From: Lepidodermella squamata
Lineage: Eukaryota; Animalia; Gastrotricha
DNA length: 64,000 bases
Assembly (NCBI GenBank): GCA_047495785.1
Contig: JBLDXI010000012.1
Span: 1,116,001-1,180,000, forward strand
Reading direction: 5' to 3'
Below, in pieces: positions 575 through 9,935 of the stretch. A program made the position numbers and the translations under genes. The notes under the pieces are model-generated. The model was not told where the DNA came from. It saw nothing but the letters and a program-made list of their open reading frames with translations, and did no database searches. The stretch's first letter is position 1. Each line of letters begins with the position of its first letter.

Positions 575-3500
575 TCAAACCTTAGAGCACTTCAAGCCGC
601 GGTCAACAAAACACGGACTAGCAATAGGATACGGAGATGGGCAGAATCCATCATCGGATGGAGACGCGATTTCCTCCCGCTCCTGGAATCCTTTATCATA
701 AACATTGCGGTTGAGCAGCCATGGTGGAGCTAATACAGAAGCAGGGTCGTACAGCGAATCTGTCCAGACATTCTCGAATGAATTGGCGTTAGAGAAAATT
801 GGCGGAAAGCGATCAACGTCCTGCCTCGGATCGAAGAGCGTGTTTTCATAGATCAAAGTCGCAGATTTCTTCAAGTGACTGATAAACTGAGCCGATTCTT
901 TATCAGCACAACTATCGCCATTATTCTCATCGATTGATGGGGAAAAATCACCCGAATTTGCTTGATCACATATTTCTATTTCACTTTTCGAGACCTTGAT
1001 AGTAAAAAAAAAATAGGAATATTTAAGTTGGAATATTCGCGCTTATAAACAAGTACGCGTTTTTTACTATTCGAACTTGGAAGAGATTCCAAAGCAAATA
1101 ATTGAATTTTTTTGCTCAAAATAGGGTGTGCCAAACAGCCCTAAATTTAGGGTTCCAGCTCTAAATTCGAGACTCCAGCACTAGATTTCCCTCATAAACA
1201 TGCTTTTTCGAGTTTCAAGTCTTCTTTGTTATCTCAATTATTTTGTTATCCTGCCTAACCAATAGATCTTCATATTACGCGTATTTTGCGGTCAGTTAAT
1301 GAGTTATACTTCAGCCTGCAGAGCCGATATCGATTCCATGTATCGATTTTACAAATCAGTGATTTTTCGTGGAACCCAACATCGCTAATTTTTCTACGTA
1401 ATTTAGGGCACCAGGTAGCTAGCATGTAAAATCCTAGGTTCAGGGAGGGCATCAGTATCGATCAAAAAACGAAAACGCCGAAATCTCAAAAAAACATGAA
1501 ACATTTAGAGACAGGACGCTTAAATTTAGTGCTGGAACCTCATTTTATGTGGTGCAAATATTTGGACCCCTTAAAATATTCTATTTCGAAGCTGAGTACA
1601 GTTCATACAGTTTCACCTGGTAGGAAAAAAGCGATTTCAGCGAATTTTATTGGGTGATGAAGTAATAGGAACCTTTCAGAAAGGTCAGGAAGCTCAAGAT
1701 TCAATTGAAATTATAAAATCAAGCAAAAATAATAGTTATTTTTTTATAGGGAATATGACGAGGCCAGATTATTTTTCCAACCCAGTGAAGTTGAGCCTTC
1801 CTCAGTTTCATGCGTGAAATATTTTGAGCGAAATTACCAATAATCCGAATAGTAAAAAATGCGTACTTCTTCAAGTACTCCGATAAAAATCAAGTGGAAT
1901 TTTCTTACACTTAATTTGGGATTTGAGGCCGTCTTCTCCTCTTGTTGAAGGGCGCCGATTTGTTGCATGAGCACAGCGACGACAATATTAATGAGGATGC
2001 TATATATTAAAAAAAATAAATGAAAAAAAATAATTGAAATTTGGTAAAAAAAACTCACAATTGTGAAAGTAGGACAAATGACATGAAATAAATTGGGGCG
2101 AATGCATGAATAATGTTACACGGAAGAACAGCCTTTTTCGAGCAAAATTTGTTGTCACCCGACATTCTAAGGATGTCCTTCAAGATCAGATTCCAATCAT
2201 CGCCCGTGAAAACTCTAAATAACGTAAGTGCTGCCATGCCGAAATTCTGAAAATTAGCATGACGCGACAGGCCGATGCAACGCTCGTAGGTACATTCGAA
2301 TCGCCCGTACAACTGAACCCCCAACGAGCCGTAGATGAAAAACAGCAATATGAAGAGAATCGATAGGTTGATGACTTGAGGAATTGCCGAGCTGACAGTG
2401 TCTAGCAAAACATGCAGACCCGTCGCAGCTCGCCATAGCTTAACAACTCGAGTTATTCGAAAAATTCTGGCGACTCTAACAACAGACGGCGATAGGTATG
2501 TAAGTTCAACATTGAAATTTTCCAGGTAAACAGCGACTAGGGATGAGGTGGTTATCGCCGCGTCTAATTGGTTCCATTTATCGCTGAGATAGCCGCAAAA
2601 GCCCATCGCCAGCATTTTAAGCAGCATTTCAGTGACTAGAAGGCCGAGAAATACGTAACCTGTTATTGTTATCGTATCTTCAAGCCAAGGCGGCATCATA
2701 TAGAACTCAACAGCCATGGATAACACGTTGATTGCCACGGCGGACATGATGAAAAGCTCGAATTTAGGATGAGTCACAAAATTAATCAAACCACGCCTCC
2801 AGGCAGGTTTCACTCGACTGGAAGCTCGGCCTCGACATCTTAGCCGGCAGGTATAATTCGCAGGCTGATTGCTTCTCTCAGGTTCATTCCTATTCATTTT
2901 CTCGGTGGTCTTTTGGAAATTATTTACAACGACCCCGACAAACATGTTGAGGGCGAAGAAGCAGACGATGAAGAGGAATGAGATGAAGTAGGCGTAGGCC
3001 CACGGGTTCGAGTTGTGAACCGGCGATAAATCCGGCCCGACGCAATCCGCCCCAGCCCGGGCTATCTCGCTCCAATCATCTAAAGTCGCTAGGATAAACA
3101 GGGTAACAAGGGCGTTGGGGAATGAGTTGAAATTATAGGAAGATATCTCCCAGTCGTAGCCTCTAGCCAGGCATTCTTCACGAGATTTAACACTGTCCAG
3201 CAGGATAGCCGTTTGCGACGATAGGTCTAGTGATGTACTCAAGTTACTTCCATAGGCGCGAATATCATAGCCCCTTGGCAGGAAGCATTTCGCAAAACAT
3301 CCGCTGAAAAGCTGGACGCCCAAAATGCCGAAAACGCCGAAGAAGAAGAAGCAAATCAGAGCGATGTGGCCGATAGGTTTTATAGAGACAATCAAAGTTT
3401 TTAGAACTATCCTCAGCCCACGAGCTCTTGAGATGAACCTCAATGGCCTCAAGGCCCTGAGAAGTCGAATCGGACGAAGGGCTAGAAAAATTGACTGATT

Positions 3501-6500
3501 TACCACGGTCCCTTTAAGCAAGTCTAGAGCTACGTCCATCACCGAAAGAAGAAGCAGGAAAAAGTCGAGGATATTAGCCGGATTTCGGAGGTAGGCACCC
3601 CTTTGAAATAGAAATCCATCAGCGATACTCTTGCATATCATCTCAAGTAGGAAAGCTCCACCGATGACGTAGCCGGCAACTCTCTCAAATTGCCGCTCGA
3701 AATCACTCATTTCCTCGCGTTCAATGCTAATCAATACGCAGCTGAAAATGGTTACAATAATGTAGAATGTGTCCCATATTGGCGAGGTTACAGCTTTTTT
3801 AAGGCGGATGCGAATGCAGTTGCGAGGTGGGAAGATGAAAAATGACGATTTGTTCGATCTACAGCACAAAATGTTAGCAAGGTTTCGCCTGATGTACCTC
3901 CCGACAGATAGAGCTTTCGCGATTGATTTGTGCCTGCCTAGCCCAGCGGTCTCCAGCTTAATTTTCGCCTCCTCCATCGCCTTGATATGCGCTTCGAGTT
4001 CTTCCTCTTGTTTGCTGCTGAATCCCTCGACTAGGATACCGACGATCAGGTTGAAAATGATGTAATCGCCGATGGCGACTAGGCCTACGAAATAGATGGC
4101 AGCCCATGCGCCGGTGTAGAACATGCCGTCACGCATGACTGTTGCCCAATTGTCGCGAGTGATGATCTGCAGCACGGTGAATAGCGATTGAAATATTGAG
4201 TCGAAATTAGCATGGGAGCAGTGAGATACAGCCACCATTTCCCCTCCTTCAGACGTCATTGTTACGTTATCGTCATCGTTGTAGGATAGAACCTTGAATT
4301 GGCATGGTGGTGGGGTAGCTGCTGGGATTGCCGTAGGACGTTCGCAGAATTTACAGCCGAAAAGGCTCAAACCCAACAACGCGACAATGTAGAGGAAAAA
4401 CCCGAATAGTAGGAAAAACGTCGTCACATTATCAACAGTATGGAGCATCAGCATCAACTGCTTTTGCAATGATGGCATAAAGCGGAGGATTTTGACTAGG
4501 CGAACTAGCCGGAAAAGCCGTAGTACCGCGAAACCCGATGTTGTATCGCCACTTTGGTTATTCAGAATCTCCACCACGCTGAATAGGCTAATGAATTTCA
4601 ATCTCTTGGTACATTTTTTACCTACTTAATGATAATAACGGCAGCATCGAGCAAGTTGAAAGCTTCTCTCAAGAAAGCTGTGGGTCCCAAAGCGATGAAA
4701 CGAATAGAAAGCTCTGCCAGAAAAATGCCGGTAAAAACCAGATTAGCTTGTTCGATCCATTGAGTCAAAGTAGCGGACTGCAAAAGCATTATGTTACCAA
4801 ATGAATCACCTTTGAATGGTGTTAAAAGTGTCAAAATTAAAATTTTAAAATTTCAAAATTATTTCAAAAAATGAGGGTGCCCCTAAAGCCCCTAAAATAT
4901 TGTTTTTCAAAACTAACCCTAACACTTATCTTAACCAATAAAAACCTAGCAATTCGTGAAAAACTTCAATTTCAAAAATTATGAGCCAAAAATTAAAATT
5001 AATAATTACAAAAAAATTGAAATTTTGTAAAAATTAACTAGATATAAATTTGAAGGGTTGTACGACTTTTCAGCAGTGACATTTCAGCAAATGAGGGTCA
5101 AATGAGCAGTGACTTTTCATCAGTGACAAGTCAGCAGCGATTTTTGTTAATTTTTCCTATATTTTTTCAAACTTATTATTTTTATCTCAATGACATTTGC
5201 GCAGTGACATTTCATCAGGAGAATTTTAGCCACCCTAAGCAGGGGGACTATGCGCTACATTGAAGTCGAGCTCAAAAAGTGCAAGGTCAATGCCCAAGAT
5301 TAATAAATAAAAATTGACGAAATGTCACTTGCTCATTTGTCGCTGCTGAAATGTCACTGCTCACTTGTCTACATGAATCATTTAAATTGATACAAAAATT
5401 GGATTTTTATGGATTTTTCACTGACAAGGTGTCACTGATGGAAAGTCACTGCTGATTTGACCCTCATTTGCGGAAGTGTCACTGCTGAAAAGTCTGACCA
5501 CGAATTTGAAGTTTTTGCTTGGAAAATCAAAAAATTTCAGGAATTTTTGAAATAAATAAATAATAAACGTTAGCAAATTACTTGTCCATGATGCTCGAGG
5601 CCCATTACGACGGCATTGAAGATGATGAGAATGCCAGTGAAAGCCTGTACAAAGGCACTCTCTAGACCTTTCAGAGTGCCATTCTGAATAGCGAAAACGC
5701 ATCTCCAAATCAATTCTGTCAAAAGGTAAAATACACAGCGGAAATTATAGAGATTATAGAGATTTTAATTTCGAACTAGTTTTTCGAAGATTTTGTAACC
5801 GTTCCTTCTCCAATCGCTTCGCCTCGCAAACGGGACATTTATCGCCGCCAAATGAAGCAGTCCGGATGGAAGGTGCCAAGCAAAGCCGCCGGTCATTCGT
5901 TATTTCCAGTTTAATCACCAGTGATTCAATGTGGTCTGTTTTTCGGCAAAAGGTTGACGCGAAGAAGCCGCGAACCTGGCGTGCGATGTGTCCGAAAAGC
6001 TTGAAAATTTGAGCGTAAAGCCCGTTCGAGTAACTTGAAACTGATTCCAACGTCGATACTGAGACCAAGTCGTCTTCAGTGCCATTATGGACATGTGTTT
6101 TACGACGTTCGTAACGCTTGATAAAATTTGGATTAGTTCAGGCCTAAAACCCGCGAATTCAACTTACGATTTGTTCTCGAACTTGCATTCTAGTTATCGC
6201 AAATTGAGCTGCGATGACAACAAGGCAAAGCTTAACGGCAAAGTATGAGCCAAGCTGTATTGAGAAGAATTGGACCTTTAGGACCTTTGTGAGCTCTTTA
6301 ACACTTACGAGGAGCAATATGACGAAGTAAGTCCACGTCCAGAATGAAAATCCATCTTGCAAATAGTTCATAATATCGACCCAGCCTTCGAGCGAAACTA
6401 CCTGGAAAATCGATACAATAGCGTAGCCGAAGTTGTCGAAATTGGTAAGTCCATGTGCCGGGTTCGGTCCTTCAGCTCGGCACTCTGAGTAGTGATTAAC

Positions 6501-7808
6501 CCACGCCCGGCACGCCGCCAGAGATGTTTCGTTGTTAGGAAACATGTCCAGGCACATCGAGTTATGCTCTTCAAACAGCGGAATTTGCTTGCAAAGCCGC
6601 ATTCCAAAGACGGGCGAACAAATGAAATCATCATCCGGCGGGTCGTAGTAGGACGGCATGAATTCGGGCGGGCTGGTTTGGTTGACTTCAAGTGGGAAGA
6701 AACATCGTTGCCGTAACACCCCAGCCCACAATTGCACGGCAATAACGGCAAATACGAACAGAACGAAAAAGCAAAACAGCAAAACTGCGATGAAATTTTA
6801 AATTATAGTCTTTCAATTGAATTTCGAAATTTACCATTTCCAATCATCGGCAAAATGTCTAAGATCAAAGTAACTAAAAGCCTGAGGCTTGAAATTCGAT
6901 TGATGGCTCTTAGCGGTCTTAGGACTCTGAGGGCGCGAATGGCGACGAGGCTGAAGTGGGAATCGGCTGAAAGGTACTCGGTCAGTCTGAAATCAATTGA
7001 TATAATTAGAGCGATATTTTTTATCATTTTGACCAACCCCATAACGATGATGAAGCAGTCGAAGCGGTTCCAAGGTTCGCTGAGATAGGCCCTTTTGCCG
7101 AACACGCCCATGGCGAACATTTTGATGAGCATTTCGGCGAGAAAGAAGGCAAAGATGACATTTTCGCAGATTTCCAGGATTAGGCATAGCTTTGTTTCGC
7201 AGAGCGAGTCGCAGGGGTCGACTAAGCCGAGAGTTACGCTGTTCACGAGGATAGCTAAAATGCTCAGCCACTCGAACCACTTGAAAGCAAAAGCAAAAAA
7301 ATTATTGAAATTATTTTCCAATTCCGTTTTTATGCCTTGAATAAGTAATTCGGACTCGAAAATGCTTTGAAACTTGGAAACTATAGTACGCTGTCCTAAT
7401 TTGGACCAATTTTCAAAGGAATATAGTTAATTCACTACCAAATTCTTATTGAATTCTGTACCAAATTATCTAGGTCCAAGTCTCCAATTTTAAGACCCAG
7501 CCTCAGACCATAACTTAACCCCTACCCCCTACCTAATCCTAACCTAACCCTAACCTAGCCAGTTAAATAACCGAATATTATGTTTAGGTATTGAATTAAA
7601 TGAAATTTGGTACCGCGTTAAGCTTTTCCCATTTTCAGATTTTTTTAACTTCAAATAATTTTGATAAAAATATTAATTTAACTATTTTATAAACTTATCT
7701 CCATGTCACGAGTTTGATAACAGCTCGGCGAAGGCAGTTCTGTTCACTAAAGCAAAACAGCGATTTATCCGCGAAAATAATAGGCTCGGTATTATAGAAA
7801 TCAGCCAT
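575..7808 (-). CDS. T-type (Cav3-like) voltage-gated calcium channel alpha-1 subunit, about 11 exons, about 1570 aa
   Basis: Four repeats have intact S4 segments (AIRALRVLRPLRAINR, VLRLFRLVRLVKILR, LRPIRLLRALRPLRFISR, VRVARIFRITRVVK). Cav3-type motifs include LWAGVLRQRC, GPNPAHGLTNFDN, LNMFVGVVVNNF, CIGLSRHANF and a gating-brake-like STLES..YAQIFKLFGHIAR. ATG is at 7808 (MADFYNTEP) and the last exon is 994-575. Confidence 0.92.
1027..1885. mobile_element. Non-autonomous TIR element, family A (possibly Kolobok-like), in the last Cav3 intron and interrupted by a family B element
   Basis: aagtacgcgttttttactattcg (1051-1073) is inverted against cgaatagtaaaaaatgcgtactt (1846-1868). The core ggaacctttcagaaaggtcaggaagctcaagattca matches the reverse complement of about 28194-28229. 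TTAA lies at 1023-1026. Confidence 0.7.
1122..1571. mobile_element. Non-autonomous TIR element, family B, nested inside family A
   Basis: Termini are agggtgtgccaaa and tttggacccct, with subterminal inverted repeats ggttccagctctaaatt and aatttagtgctggaacc. The family A sequence resumes after it. A second copy lies at about 35929-36625. Confidence 0.65.
5056..5501. mobile_element. Foldback/MITE with CAGTGAC subrepeats in a Cav3 intron
   Basis: gacttttcagcagtgacatttcagcaaatgagggtcaaatgagcagtgactttt is inverted against aaagtcactgctgatttgaccctcatttgcggaagtgtcactgctgaaaagtc. Confidence 0.7.
7385..7620. repeat. Small repeat element containing a degenerate (CCCTAA/CCTAA)n tract in Cav3 intron 1
   Basis: cttaacccctaccccctacctaatcctaacctaaccctaacc at about 7514-7556, flanked by weak inverted ends acgctgtcctaattt and aaatttggtaccgcgt. 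Confidence 0.4.
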
Positions 7809-8468
7809 TGCCAGTATATTTACATCAACTGTTAGGATTGAACAAGTTGCAAACACTCCACTATCCTAGATTTTGCACTATCAATATCTACTGCGAAATG
7901 TCTCTCTCGAGGCCACAAACATTGCCCATTTATTTTCTAACCCTCTAATAAAGCTGCGATCTCTAAATTTAAGCTCATCGTTCTGTTATATATCCGCGGC
8001 AGTCACATGACCGAAAAACAAGATCAGTCCTCGTACACCATTTTCAGACAATATATTAATTTATTTTAAAAGCTTGTCTCTATAAAAGGCGTAATTGTTT
8101 TTGCGAATTTCTACGCTAAAATCCCACGAGTCGATTTGATCAAGTAGGCGCACTTGGTGAATTCCAGCAGCGATGCCCCAATTAAAATTCATAAATAGAA
8201 TCGATAGCAAGCGAAAAAGAGACATCTGCTCAACTCTGCGTGACGAGGACTAGATCGATCCTGTTTTAGTAAAATTACCAGAATCCCTATCTAGTTCGTC
8301 TGTTTCAGATTCTATTTAAATAGAGGAATTTTCGTTTTATAACTCAGTGGCTGAGGGGGACATGCCAACACCATCATGCCCATTCATAAATTTACCTAAA
8401 AATTTACAAACAGCATTTGCTAGACTGATGGCACGCGACTTGAGTGTTTCGATTGAATAAAAAACGGA

Positions 8469-9935
8469 ATGAAAAATTCTTCGAACGAAAATTGGTGGGA
8501 AAAAACGCATTCTACGATGAATTTGAGAAAAGGCATTTTTAAATCAATCGCATCAGTATTTTTTAGTATTATTATCGCCTTCGTTTTGTTAACTCATCTT
8601 TTAAGCGTCGAAGATGTTCAGAAGATCGATAATCAATCTTCGTCCCATTCAATCGTGAACCCCCCACGCCAGCTAACCTACCGCGAGTGCCGAAAATTGT
8701 TTTACTATCGAGTGAAAGAAATTCGGCCGTATGAAACCCGAAAACCGTGGCCGACCAGCATTTTCATGAAACGCTACAACGCGACAAGGCAGAGCGTTTT
8801 CCTCATCGTAACGACAACATGGCCAGGTGAGCCGCCTAAACGTGTACCTCAAGTTTTCTCCAAGGCCGAGTACAAAAAATGGGCAAGTGATGCGAACTGG
8901 TTAATCCAGGTTTCGGGAGATAATCAATGGCTGCCGTGCAACTTTCGAACAACCGGAAATCGGCTTGACAAGCATAAATTGGTCGCTGTATTTGAATGTC
9001 CCTTGGCAATGGCTTATTACAACGGGGTTGAGTTATCGGTTATAGCTAAAATGGGCCACAAAATTGAAGTTTTTATGGAAAAGTTGCCATCGTGCCAAAT
9101 TCAACTTCCAAAGCCCCGTTACCGCCTAGTTGCTACAACGCTGGTCGCTGAGGACCATATTGACCGAATTCCCGAATGGATCGAGTACCATCATCTCATC
9201 GGCTTCGAGTTTTTCGTAATTTACGTGAATCAAAATTCAACGACTCGATTCGAAAAATTGCTCGATGTTTATATAAATCAACTAAAAATTGCTGAAGTTT
9301 CAATTTTTTATCACGATCAAGTGACAAGCAGTAACAGGAATTCAACATCGCAGGTTCCTAGCGAAAATGATTGCCTGTACCAATTGAAAGGGCGTGCGAA
9401 ATGGCTGGCTGTTATCGACGTTGATGAATTCATCCAGCTTTACCCGGGGACGAATTCGAAAAAAGCGGCAAGTTTACTGGATTACTTGGAAAAGGTGCAT
9501 CGAGATTCGGGTTTTATCGGTGGGGTAAAGCTGTACAACTGGTTTTTTGGCTATGAGCCAAATCGTAATCCACCGAGGACTTTGGCGAAATGGAACGATG
9601 GCAATGTCGTGTTTTCTCGAGTTAACGAAATGAGACGGCGAACCGTGGATAAATGGCCCGAGGCGATAGATTGGCGGCGTAAAACTATCATGCTAGTCAG
9701 CAATGTAGCGTATTTTTGGATTCACTCTGTTAGCATGGGTGGCCAGGCTGTGTGGGCGGATGCTTATGAGGACGCGAGGCTTGTTCACTACAGGACGCCG
9801 TACCTTCAACCAGGCGAATTCCTGAACGGATCGGCAACCTATGACGACAGTATGGCTGAGAAGTTCGGGAAAATGATAAGCGAAAGACTTGTATCTCGAG
9901 GTTTTATAGTGAATGAAACTGCTTTCTATGAATAA
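8469..9935 (+). CDS. Glycosyltransferase family 92 (DUF23) type II membrane protein, intronless
   Basis: N-terminal TM anchor (IASVFFSIIIAFVLLTHLL), the motifs EWIEYHHLIGFEFFVIY and NDCLYQLKGRAKWLAVIDVDEFI (DxD), and C-terminal WIH and LVHYR. Confidence 0.85.
   Translation: MKNSSNENWWEKTHSTMNLRKGIFKSIASVFFSIIIAFVLLTHLLSVEDVQKIDNQSSSHSIVNPPRQLTYRECRKLFYYRVKEIRPYETRKPWPTSIFMKRYNATRQSVFLIVTTTWPGEPPKRVPQVFSKAEYKKWASDANWLIQVSGDNQWLPCNFRTTGNRLDKHKLVAVFECPLAMAYYNGVELSVIAKMGHKIEVFMEKLPSCQIQLPKPRYRLVATTLVAEDHIDRIPEWIEYHHLIGFEFFVIYVNQNSTTRFEKLLDVYINQLKIAEVSIFYHDQVTSSNRNSTSQVPSENDCLYQLKGRAKWLAVIDVDEFIQLYPGTNSKKAASLLDYLEKVHRDSGFIGGVKLYNWFFGYEPNRNPPRTLAKWNDGNVVFSRVNEMRRRTVDKWPEAIDWRRKTIMLVSNVAYFWIHSVSMGGQAVWADAYEDARLVHYRTPYLQPGEFLNGSATYDDSMAEKFGKMISERLVSRGFIVNETAFYE

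What the first reader, a model, noticed from the sequence alone, without database searches (positions are those of the whole stretch)
2199..6389. Cav3-type channel with a non-canonical E-D-D-D selectivity filter and loss of the domain II +1 aspartate
Seen: the P-loops read SLEGW (DI, E at 6389-6387), TRDNW (DII, D at 4154-4152), TLDDW (DIII, 3080-3078) and TGDDW (DIV, 2201-2199). Established: Cav3 channels have TLEGW/TQEDW/SKDGW/TGDNW (EEDD), and the Asp after the DII Glu is conserved in Ca2+ channels and contributes to Ca2+ selectivity. Here DII has E to D and D(+1) to N with an Arg at -1, while new Asp residues appear at +1 in DIII and DIV. All S4 sensors and the long ORF are intact. Inference: this is a functional channel with a redistributed acidic ring and altered Ca2+/Na+/H+ permeation, perhaps a neofunctionalised paralog.
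Basis: partly seen in the sequence, partly recalled or inferred. Interest (0 to 1): 0.72.

Follow-up and report, generated by a model that had tools for sequence, protein, structure and literature searches.

The report
T-type calcium channel with EDDD pore
This is an intact gene for a T-type (Cav3) voltage-gated channel whose four pore residues read E-D-D-D, not the E-E-D-D that reviews call invariant. It is one of nine such genes in a small invertebrate genome, so it is a real and unusual channel family, though no current has been measured.

Summary
The four P-loops read SLEGW, TRDNW, TLDDW and TGDDW at exactly the stated codons (GAA 6389-6387, GAC 4154-4152, GAT 3080-3078, GAT 2201-2199).

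The gene is a 10-exon, roughly 1,459-aa Cav3-type channel, not one long ORF. Its S4 sensors and gating brake are intact. Heterozygous sites are mostly synonymous, which points to purifying selection.

EDDD is not special to this gene. The genome (121 Mb, 151 contigs, probably the gastrotrich Lepidodermella squamata) holds ten Cav3 genes, and nine are EDDD. Eight sit in a tandem array on contig C32. One gene on C38 is EEDD. A metagenome relative also carries EDDD genes. The nine genes plus one metagenome gene form one clade (100/99), and the window gene is sister to C32 gene F (100/100).

This scan had already reported the C32 EDDD cluster (s1-407581). This gene is its dispersed tenth member.

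What is unique here is the ring one residue above the filter: Asn in domain II, and Asp in both domains III and IV. A 2023 review says Cav3 filters are "always EEDD" and that a domain II Asp is near-universal, so this is a new variant of a known kind.

Permeation is inferred only. I found no RNA data.

The parts
7699..7808 (-). Exon 1: start codon ATG at 7808-7806, N-terminus up to ...IKLVTW plus two bases of an Arg codon
   Evidence: Reading of the sequence. Paralogs A, B, E, G and I carry four residues between ...L and WFE. Paralog A, spliced GT-AG, gives ITWR-WFER.
7281..7698 (-). Intron 1 (418 nt), non-canonical ATAAGT...AA ends, contains a high-copy repeat
   Evidence: The homologous introns of paralogs I and F appear to end in AC (I also has the ATAAGT donor; F's donor was not located). 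Paralog A's is GT-AG. Read depth is about 3,900 at 7450-7650. A GT-AG alternative (7709/7280) would delete the conserved VTWR and was rejected.
7038..7280 (-). Exon 2: DI S1-S3
   Evidence: tblastn with Cav3 proteins; Pfam Ion_trans; model.
6835..6986 (-). Exon 3: DI S3-S4 and the S4-S5 linker (S4 RALRVLRPLR)
   Evidence: The 51-nt GT-AG intron 2 (7037-6987) is removed. The spliced length matches Cav3.1.
6309..6784 (-). Exon 4: DI S5, turret and P-loop SLEGW (Glu codon 6389-6387), start of S6
   Evidence: Intron 3 (6834-6785) is dense in heterozygous SNPs and indels.
6168..6254 (-). Exon 5: DI S6 and first helix of the gating brake
5777..6116 (-). Exon 6: I-II linker with gating-brake loop and second helix (..STLES..GLYAQIFKLFGHIARQ..); the linker is short
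   Evidence: Alignment to eight Cav3 proteins and to the paralogs.
5582..5715 (-). Exon 7: DII S1
4778..5581 (-). Intron 7 (804 nt, GT-AG) filled with high-copy repeats
   Evidence: Read depth is 3,000-9,000 at 5050-5650.
4626..4777 (-). Exon 8: DII S2-S3
2059..4578 (-). Exon 9 (2,520 nt): DII S3/S4 to DIV S6. Contains TRDNW (Asp 4154-4152, Asn 4151-4149), TLDDW (3080-3075), TGDDW (2201-2196), three S4 segments and a 55-aa four-cysteine DII turret
   Evidence: The acceptor was set at 4580-4579 because the second haplotype destroys the AG at 4589-4588, and because the product then aligns to Cav3.1 without an insert.
1834..1999 (-). Exon 10: end of DIV S6 and a short C-terminal tail; the 3' end is uncertain
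   Evidence: The intron in S6 is shared with paralogs F and G. The tail is not conserved among paralogs. A possible GTAAGA donor lies near 1911. No RNA data were available to settle it.

Best explanation
The locus encodes a functional four-domain, voltage-gated cation channel of the Cav3 (T-type) clade. It is about 1,459 aa long and is built from 10 exons on the minus strand.

It belongs to an old subfamily seen so far only in this genome and one environmental relative. In that subfamily the domain II filter glutamate is aspartate (E-D-D-D). The window gene is a dispersed duplicate, sister to gene F of a tandem array on another contig.

Shown here: family identity, intactness, purifying selection, subfamily membership, and the pattern of the filter and of the ring one residue above it (+1).

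Inferred: it gates like a T-type channel, since S4 sensors and gating brake are conserved. Its pore probably still binds Ca2+, but at an outer site formed by the +1 aspartates of domains III and IV in place of the usual domain II 'beacon' aspartate, which here is asparagine. The shorter DII Asp and the neighbouring Arg probably lower Ca2+/Na+ discrimination relative to canonical EEDD channels. I therefore expect a low-voltage-activated, mixed Ca2+/Na+ conductance in which external Ca2+ blocks the Na+ current.

My odds are about 0.85 for the identity and family part, and about 0.4 for this specific permeation prediction.
For: Family:
- Pfam Ion_trans hits on all the pieces that hold transmembrane segments.
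- The best solved structures are Cav3.1, Cav3.2 and Cav3.3 at 627-658 bits, against 401 bits for Cav2.3.
- The careful tree places the gene inside Cav3.
- The gating-brake helix-loop-helix aligns to eight Cav3 proteins.

Intactness and selection:
- Every exon is open. Eight introns are GT-AG and one has AT-AA ends, with AC-ending introns at the same place in paralogs I and F.
- Between the two haplotypes there are about 16 synonymous changes against about 4 amino-acid changes, plus one in-frame 3-bp indel in a turret loop. Introns are dense in SNPs and frame-breaking indels.

Subfamily:
- P-loops of all ten Cav3 genes were read.
- The EDDD clade has 100/99 support, window+F 100/100, and paralog A plus a metagenome gene 100/100. 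The split within the subfamily therefore predates the divergence of two species that are only about 55% identical in this protein.

Mechanism, from the literature:
- A human Cav3.1 EDDD mutant is functional. It activates faster and at slightly more negative voltage, and it is more permeable to Na+, Cd2+ and Mn2+ (10.1101/626069).
- The +1 'beacon' Asp governs Ca2+ selectivity. Asn at DII +1 occurs in one anthozoan Cav3 isoform predicted to be Na+-permeable. A DIV beacon occurs in NALCN and in non-animal Cav channels (PMC10120453).
- The engineered Ca2+-selective bacterial channel CavAb has the filter TLDDWSD (PMC8677417). The window's DIII reads TLDDWSE.
Against: - There are no RNA data, so expression and the exon junctions are unverified.
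- The C-terminus is unresolved.
- No ortholog from another species was found, so conservation of the unique N/D/D ring over time is untested.
- The permeation prediction rests on mutants in a human background and on a review's classification.
- Arg at DII -1 could change the picture either way.
- Turret loops, which are known to set Na+ permeability in invertebrate Cav3, differ strongly here: the DII turret is 55 aa with four Cys.
- The read support may come from the same sample as the assembly.
Confidence: 0.7

Rival explanations
1. It is mainly a sodium-permeable T-type channel. With the DII beacon neutralised (Asn), a shorter DII Asp and an Arg beside it, Ca2+ binding is weak and the channel carries mostly Na+. 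It would work like molluscan LCav3-12a or the anthozoan Asn isoform.
For: A review classifies a neutral non-glycine DII +1 residue as sodium-permeable, and names Asn in an anthozoan Cav3. The Cav3.1 EDDD mutant passes more Na+.
Against: There are two extra carboxylates at DIII +1 and DIV +1, and DIII has a CavAb-like TLDDWSE motif. The DIV L6 loop has only two cysteines (one possible disulfide), whereas the review calls two disulfide pairs obligatory for sodium-permeable Cav3.
Confidence: 0.3
2. The substitutions are nearly neutral. E to D keeps the charge, and the channel behaves as an ordinary Ca2+-selective T-type channel. The +1 ring simply drifts among redundant paralogs.
For: The +1 ring varies freely among the ten paralogs (D, A, S or N in DII; N, D or K in DIV). 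The Cav3.1 EDDD mutant has only modest gating changes.
Against: The same mutant has altered permeation and Cd2+ block. Asp in DII is fixed across a deep clade, and one paralog keeps Glu. In the database sample, 31 of 38 E-x-D-D channels keep Glu, and 32 of 38 keep the DII +1 Asp.
Confidence: 0.15
3. It is a decaying or unexpressed duplicate (pseudogene), or the odd residues are assembly or amplification errors.
For: There is no RNA evidence. The published assembly that this genome resembles was made from amplified DNA. The C-terminal tail is not conserved.
Against: There is no stop or frameshift in about 4.4 kb of coding sequence. Heterozygosity is strongly biased to synonymous sites, and indels are confined to introns or are in-frame. 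Short-read unitigs agree with the assembly at the filter codons. The same residues recur in paralogs and in an independent metagenome.
Confidence: 0.05

Closest known systems
Cav3 / T-type voltage-gated calcium channels (human CACNA1G/H/I; invertebrate LCav3, TCav3)
   Same: Four-domain architecture; best sequence and structure-sequence matches; nests inside the clade; gating brake in the I-II linker; Asp in the DIII and DIV filter positions; DI TLEGW-like loop.
   Different: The DII filter residue is Asp where Cav3 has Glu (EDDD against 'always EEDD'). DII +1 is Asn where Cav3 has Asp. DIII and DIV +1 are Asp where Cav3 has Gly and Asn. DII -1 is Arg where Cav3 has Gln. Linkers are very short: about 1,459 aa against about 2,000-2,400 aa. 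It is one of ten paralogs, where most invertebrates have one.
Human Cav3.1 'CatSper-like' pore mutant EDDD (Garza-Lopez et al.; 10.1101/626069 and its reference 11)
   Same: The same E-to-D change in domain II, on an otherwise E-x-D-D ring.
   Different: That mutant is engineered and keeps the DII +1 Asp and Gly/Asn at DIII/DIV +1. The window gene is natural and has a rearranged +1 ring.
Anthozoan cnidarian Cav3 isoform lacking the DII beacon aspartate (Asn at +1), as described in PMC10120453
   Same: Asn replaces the DII +1 Asp in a natural Cav3 paralog that coexists with other Cav3 genes.
   Different: The cnidarian channel keeps the EEDD ring and, as far as the review describes it, has no compensating Asp in DIII or DIV. 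The review calls it the only animal Cav gene lacking that Asp.
CavAb / CaChBac, Ca2+-selective mutants of bacterial sodium channels (filters TLDDWSD / TLDDWAD; PMC8677417)
   Same: The window's DIII P-loop reads TLDDWSE. It has an Asp-Asp pair at the filter and +1 positions, as in the engineered Ca2+-selective filters.
   Different: Those are homotetramers with the motif in all four subunits and are unrelated by descent. Here the motif appears in one of four different domains.
NALCN and non-animal Cav channels with the beacon Asp in domain IV (PMC10120453)
   Same: Asp at DIV +1.
   Different: They are a different family, with filter rings EEEE or EKEE/EEKE. NALCN keeps Gly at the other +1 positions.

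Membership tests
Cav3 (T-type) channel family | Four homologous 6-TM domains with positively charged S4 segments | tested here: met
   Pfam Ion_trans on the pieces. Four P-loops and four S4 motifs are present in the spliced model.
Cav3 (T-type) channel family | Closer in sequence to Cav3 than to Cav1/Cav2/Nav/NALCN, and placed inside the Cav3 clade | tested here: met
   Bit scores are 658 for Cav3.1, 401 for Cav2.3, 300 for Nav and 180 for NALCN. Trees with outgroups support the placement.
Cav3 (T-type) channel family | Gating-brake helix-loop-helix in the proximal I-II linker | tested here: met
   Local alignment to eight Cav3 proteins across helix 1, the STL(A/E)S loop and helix 2. A structure-sequence search of this exon alone found nothing, so support rests alone.
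Cav3 (T-type) channel family | Selectivity-filter ring E-E-D-D ('always EEDD', PMC10120453) | tested here: not met
   The ring is E-D-D-D: the DII codon is GAC at 4154-4152. By descent the gene is in the Cav3 clade, but it fails the family's pore signature. I file it as a divergent subfamily, not as a standard member.
Cav3 (T-type) channel family | Aspartate at DII filter +1 ('beacon') | tested here: not met
   Asn (AAT 4151-4149). In the database sample, 32 of 38 E-x-D-D channels have Asp there.
Cav3 (T-type) channel family | Low-voltage activation and fast inactivation | not testable with these tools
   This needs electrophysiology.
EDDD Cav3 subfamily of this genome (cluster reported earlier by the scan, s1-407581) | Asp at the DII filter position, and monophyly with the C32 array genes | tested here: met
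   P-loop table. Clade support is 100/99, and the window gene is sister to gene F at 100/100.

The most novel reading that the evidence does not exclude
Gastrotrichs evolved a ten-gene radiation of T-type channels in which the filter ring became EDDD and the Ca2+-attracting +1 aspartate was moved between domains (DII, DIV, DIII) or dropped. This produced a graded set of Ca2+/Na+ selectivities from one scaffold. The window gene would be the extreme case: a Ca2+-binding pore rebuilt on DIII/DIV aspartates, with a CavAb-like TLDDWSE loop. It would be a natural test of the 'beacon' rule for ion selectivity.
Probability: 0.3. Interest if true: 0.75.

Novelty: new variant of a known kind. Interest (0 to 1): 0.55.

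Why it matters
A recent review (PMC10120453) states that Cav3 filters are always EEDD, from choanoflagellates to humans. It also states that only one anthozoan gene lacks the domain II beacon aspartate, and that non-vertebrates have one or at most two Cav3 genes.

This genome breaks all three statements at once. Ten paralogs share one scaffold but differ at the filter and at the +1 ring, which makes them a ready-made natural mutant series for testing how four-domain channels choose between Ca2+ and Na+. The window gene supplies the one combination not seen elsewhere: no DII beacon, with beacons in DIII and DIV.

It also hints that a microscopic animal with few neurons diversified its excitability through T-type channels.

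Tried and rejected
- **RNA evidence.** The run search found one DNA holder and no RNA run. Expression and splice junctions are therefore unverified.
- **Ortholog search.** The word-index protein search, the exhaustive representative search and the JGI metagenome scan gave nothing closer than 45% identity. The scan's five loci were only 28-30% identical. Conservation of the N/D/D ring in another species could not be tested.
- **Gating-brake exon against solved structures.** Only a chance match was found. The alignment to Cav3 sequences was used for this feature.
- **First gene model, intron 1.** I drew intron 1 as GT-AG (7709/7280). I rejected this after the paralog comparison showed that the four residues VTWR are coding.
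- **First gene model, exon 9 acceptor.** I placed the acceptor at 4589-4588. I rejected this because the other haplotype lacks that AG, and because the 47-nt intron ending at 4579 gives a better alignment.
- **C-terminus.** Comparing tails among paralogs found no conservation beyond DIV S6. Downstream ORFs have no Pfam match.
- **Joined protein.** Those searches used exon references only. The joined model was built and used only inside local scripts, for coordinates, local BLAST anchors against sequences already fetched, and trees.
- **Structure prediction.** I did not run it. No single referenced piece contains all four pore domains.
- **Paralog sequences in the trees.** These are stitched tblastn segments anchored on the window protein. 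They are not curated gene models.
Full report
**1. What is in the sequence**

On the minus strand between about 7808 and 1834 lies a gene in ten exons. The largest exon (4578-2059) sits within an 848-aa ORF and runs from DII S3/S4 to DIV S6. The other exons are 87-476 nt.

Seven introns are 47-61 nt long. Introns 1 (418 nt) and 7 (804 nt) are longer and hold high-copy repeats, with read depth of 3,000-9,000. Eight introns are GT-AG. Intron 1 has ATAAGT...AA ends.

- DI: SLEGW, GAA 6389-6387.
- DII: TRDNW, GAC 4154-4152.
- DIII: TLDDW, GAT 3080-3078.
- DIV: TGDDW, GAT 2201-2199.

They align without gaps to TLEGW/TQEDW/SKDGW/TGDNW of Cav3 proteins. All four S4 segments have regularly spaced Arg/Lys.

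**2. Family**

Pfam finds Ion_trans in all the pieces that hold transmembrane segments. Against the sequences of solved structures, the 848-aa exon scores as follows:

| Match | Bits |
|---|---|
| Cav3.1, Cav3.2, Cav3.3 | 627-658 |
| Cav2.3 | 401 |
| Cav1 | about 370-380 |
| Nav | about 300 |
| NALCN | about 180 |

The proximal I-II linker aligns to the Cav3 gating brake: helix 1, an STL(A/E)S loop, and helix 2.

No database protein is more than 45% identical.

**3. Is it alive?**

DNA unitigs of run X1 cover the gene at about 70x and split into two haplotypes of about 35x each. I mapped the listed differences onto the model:
- About 16 are synonymous.
- About 4 codons change the amino acid. 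Two of them, together with an in-frame 3-bp indel, lie in the DII turret loop.
- Introns carry dense SNPs and the only frame-breaking indels.

That is the signature of purifying selection on a coding gene.

Error-free unitigs span the DI, DII and DIII filter codons. Nothing was listed at the DIV codon, but the variant table was truncated. X1 may be the assembly's own sample. No RNA run was found.

**4. Context in the genome**

The genome has 121.2 Mb in 151 contigs, and the window is at C12:1.116-1.180 Mb. It holds nine more Cav3 genes:
- Eight in a tandem array on C32, at 4.335-4.485 Mb (A-H).
- One on C38 (I). A duplicate of its 3' end sits on the short contig C112.

Their P-loops:

| Gene | DI | DII | DIII | DIV |
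|---|---|---|---|---|
| A | SLEGW | TQDAW | TFDGW | TGDDW |
| B | NLESW | TQDSW | TFDGW | TGDKW |
| C | SLESW | TQDSW | TLDGW | TGDNW |
| D | SLESW | TQDDW | TLDGW | TGDNW |
| E | SLEGW | TQDDW | TLDGW | TGDDW |
| F | SLEGW | TRDDW | TLDGW | TGDNW |
| G | SLEMW | TQDSW | TLDGW | TGDNW |
| H | SLEGW | TQDAW | TFDGW | TGDNW |
| I | SLEGW | TQEAW | TFDGW | TGDNW |

Nine of ten genes, including the window gene, are therefore E-D-D-D. Only gene I is E-E-D-D, and even it lacks the DII +1 Asp.

The paralogs are 46-55% identical to the window protein, so the radiation is old.

**5. Phylogeny**

The careful maximum-likelihood tree used 32 rows and 1,203 columns. A quick 54-row tree agrees with it. It gives:
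- A clade at 100/100 holding all ten genes and two genes from an environmental metagenome.
- Within it, the nine EDDD genes plus one metagenome gene at 100/99.
- The window gene sister to gene F at 100/100.
- Gene A sister to the metagenome gene at 100/100.

The metagenome contigs (ENA ERZ23486787; L032, L034; 39% G+C) carry:
- SLEGW/TQDAW/TFDGW/TGDDW, which is the same set of motifs as gene A at only about 55% identity.
- SLEGW/TQDDGW/SFDGW/TGDHW.

The A-type versus F/window-type split thus predates the divergence of two quite distant species, and Asp in DII has been kept throughout. Whether Glu in gene I is ancestral or a reversal is not resolved, because the DII-Asp gene on L032 branches outside gene I at only 90/64 support.

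**6. How unusual is this?**

Among database proteins with four readable P-loops and an E-x-D-D ring (38 proteins):

| Position | Residues seen |
|---|---|
| DII filter | Glu in 31 |
| DII +1 | Asp in 32 |
| DIII +1 | Gly in 29 |
| DIV +1 | Asn in 36, never Asp |

Asp at DIII +1 occurs only in non-Cav3-like or aberrant entries. The clearest natural EDDD examples elsewhere in that sample are:
- A cichlid 'Cav3.2-like' protein with TQDDW (P0092, XP_039472111.1).
- An unnamed, probably protist clade (P0132, P0138, P0161) with T(R/Y)D(S/N)W and (T/S)LDD motifs. This clade is sister to all Cav3-like channels in the tree.

A 2023 review (PMC10120453) makes three relevant statements:
- Anthozoans hold the only known animal Cav gene lacking the DII beacon Asp, with Asn in its place.
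- Only cnidarians and flatworms among non-vertebrates have two Cav3 genes.

Within this genome the window gene is unique in three ways. It has Asp at DIII +1, it has Asn at DII +1, and it combines these with Asp at DIV +1, which it shares with genes A and E. It shares Arg at DII -1 only with gene F.

**7. Mechanism**

Shown: this is a Cav3-clade channel gene under selection, with ring E-D-D-D and +1 ring G-N-D-D.

Taken from the literature:
- E-to-D in DII of human Cav3.1 gives a working channel. It has a slightly negative shift in activation and faster activation, with higher Na+, Cd2+ and Mn2+ permeability and weaker Cd2+ block (10.1101/626069, citing its reference 11).
- The +1 Asp is proposed as the main determinant of Ca2+ selectivity or Ca2+ block. 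It can sit in DIV in NALCN and in non-animal Cav channels.
- Ca2+-selective bacterial mutants have TLDDWSD or TLDDWAD filters (PMC8677417). The window's DIII reads TLDDWSE.

Inference: the outer Ca2+ site is rebuilt from the DIII and DIV aspartates. Net charge over the -1 to +1 positions (4 + 2 - 1 = 5) equals that of a canonical Cav3 (4 + 1 = 5).

I expect a T-type-like channel that still binds and passes Ca2+ but discriminates less against Na+. The main rival is a chiefly Na+-carrying channel. One point against that rival is that the DIV L6 loop has two cysteines, not the four that the review calls obligatory for sodium-permeable Cav3. A neutral-drift reading and a pseudogene reading are less likely.

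**8. Organism**

An earlier agent called the genome gastrotrich-like. The published Lepidodermella squamata assembly is 122 Mb in 157 contigs at 43% G+C (PMC11660948). This genome is 121.2 Mb in 151 contigs, and the window averages about 43-44% G+C. That is consistent, not proof.

**9. Relation to earlier scan results**

Finding s1-407581 had already reported the EDDD filter shared by the C32 cluster. My independent reading of all ten genes agrees with it. This report adds the dispersed tenth member, the tree, the metagenome relatives, the +1-ring comparison and the polymorphism evidence.

Finding s1-395238 proposed an AT-AA intron at 7281-7698. Paralog comparison supports it.

**10. Limits**

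- There are no expression data, no ortholog and no structure.
- The C-terminus is unresolved.
- Paralog sequences used in the trees are stitched tblastn segments.
- The joined spliced protein was used only in local scripts and was never sent to a search or folding tool.

Noticed in passing
window 7281-7698 (minus strand); paralogs on C32/C38 (L013, L020, L029): Intron 1 of the channel gene has ATAAGT...AA ends. At the homologous position, paralog I has an ATAAGT donor and an AC acceptor, paralog F has an AC acceptor, and paralog A has an ordinary GT-AG intron. Paralogs B, E and G have no intron there. This supports the other first-stage note (s1-395238). A GT-AG alternative would delete four conserved residues.
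   Followed up: partly
G000:C38:595784-603807 (L029/L030) and G000:C112:44483-45299 (L031): This is the only paralog with the EEDD filter ring. It reads SLEGW/TQEAW/TFDGW/TGDNW, so even it lacks the domain II +1 aspartate, and no gene in this genome has the textbook TQEDW. Its 3' end is duplicated on the short contig C112, probably an uncollapsed haplotype.
   Followed up: partly
window 5050-5650 and 7450-7650: High-copy repeats sit inside introns 7 and 1. Summed unitig depth is 3,000-9,000, against about 70 for the exons, with many partial joints. They are probably small mobile elements.
   Followed up: no
database proteins P0092/P0021 (Oreochromis XP_039472111.1, Astatotilapia): A divergent teleost 'Cav3.2-like' paralog has TQDDW in domain II (E-D-D-D), while its relatives in Scomber and Anoplopoma keep Glu. 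This is another natural exception to 'always EEDD'.
   Followed up: no
database proteins P0132, P0138, P0161, P0209 (metagenome-derived, unnamed): A clade of four-domain channels is sister to all Cav3-like channels. It has an E-D-D-D ring and motifs TRDSW/TRDNW and TLDDW, strikingly like the window gene's DII and DIII loops, presumably by convergence. Arg at -1 often accompanies Asp at the DII filter position in non-animal channels (TRDDW in about ten representatives).
   Followed up: no
window 8469-9935 (+): An intronless 488-aa ORF next to the channel gene matches glycosyltransferase family 92 (Pfam PF01697, E 1.4e-23).
   Followed up: partly
In molluscan Cav3 this loop sets sodium permeability.
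   Followed up: partly
ENA metagenome ERZ23486787 contigs (L032, L034): An uncultured relative (39% G+C, long intron-poor exons) carries at least two Cav3 genes of this lineage. It is a possible source of comparative data for the phylum.
   Followed up: partly
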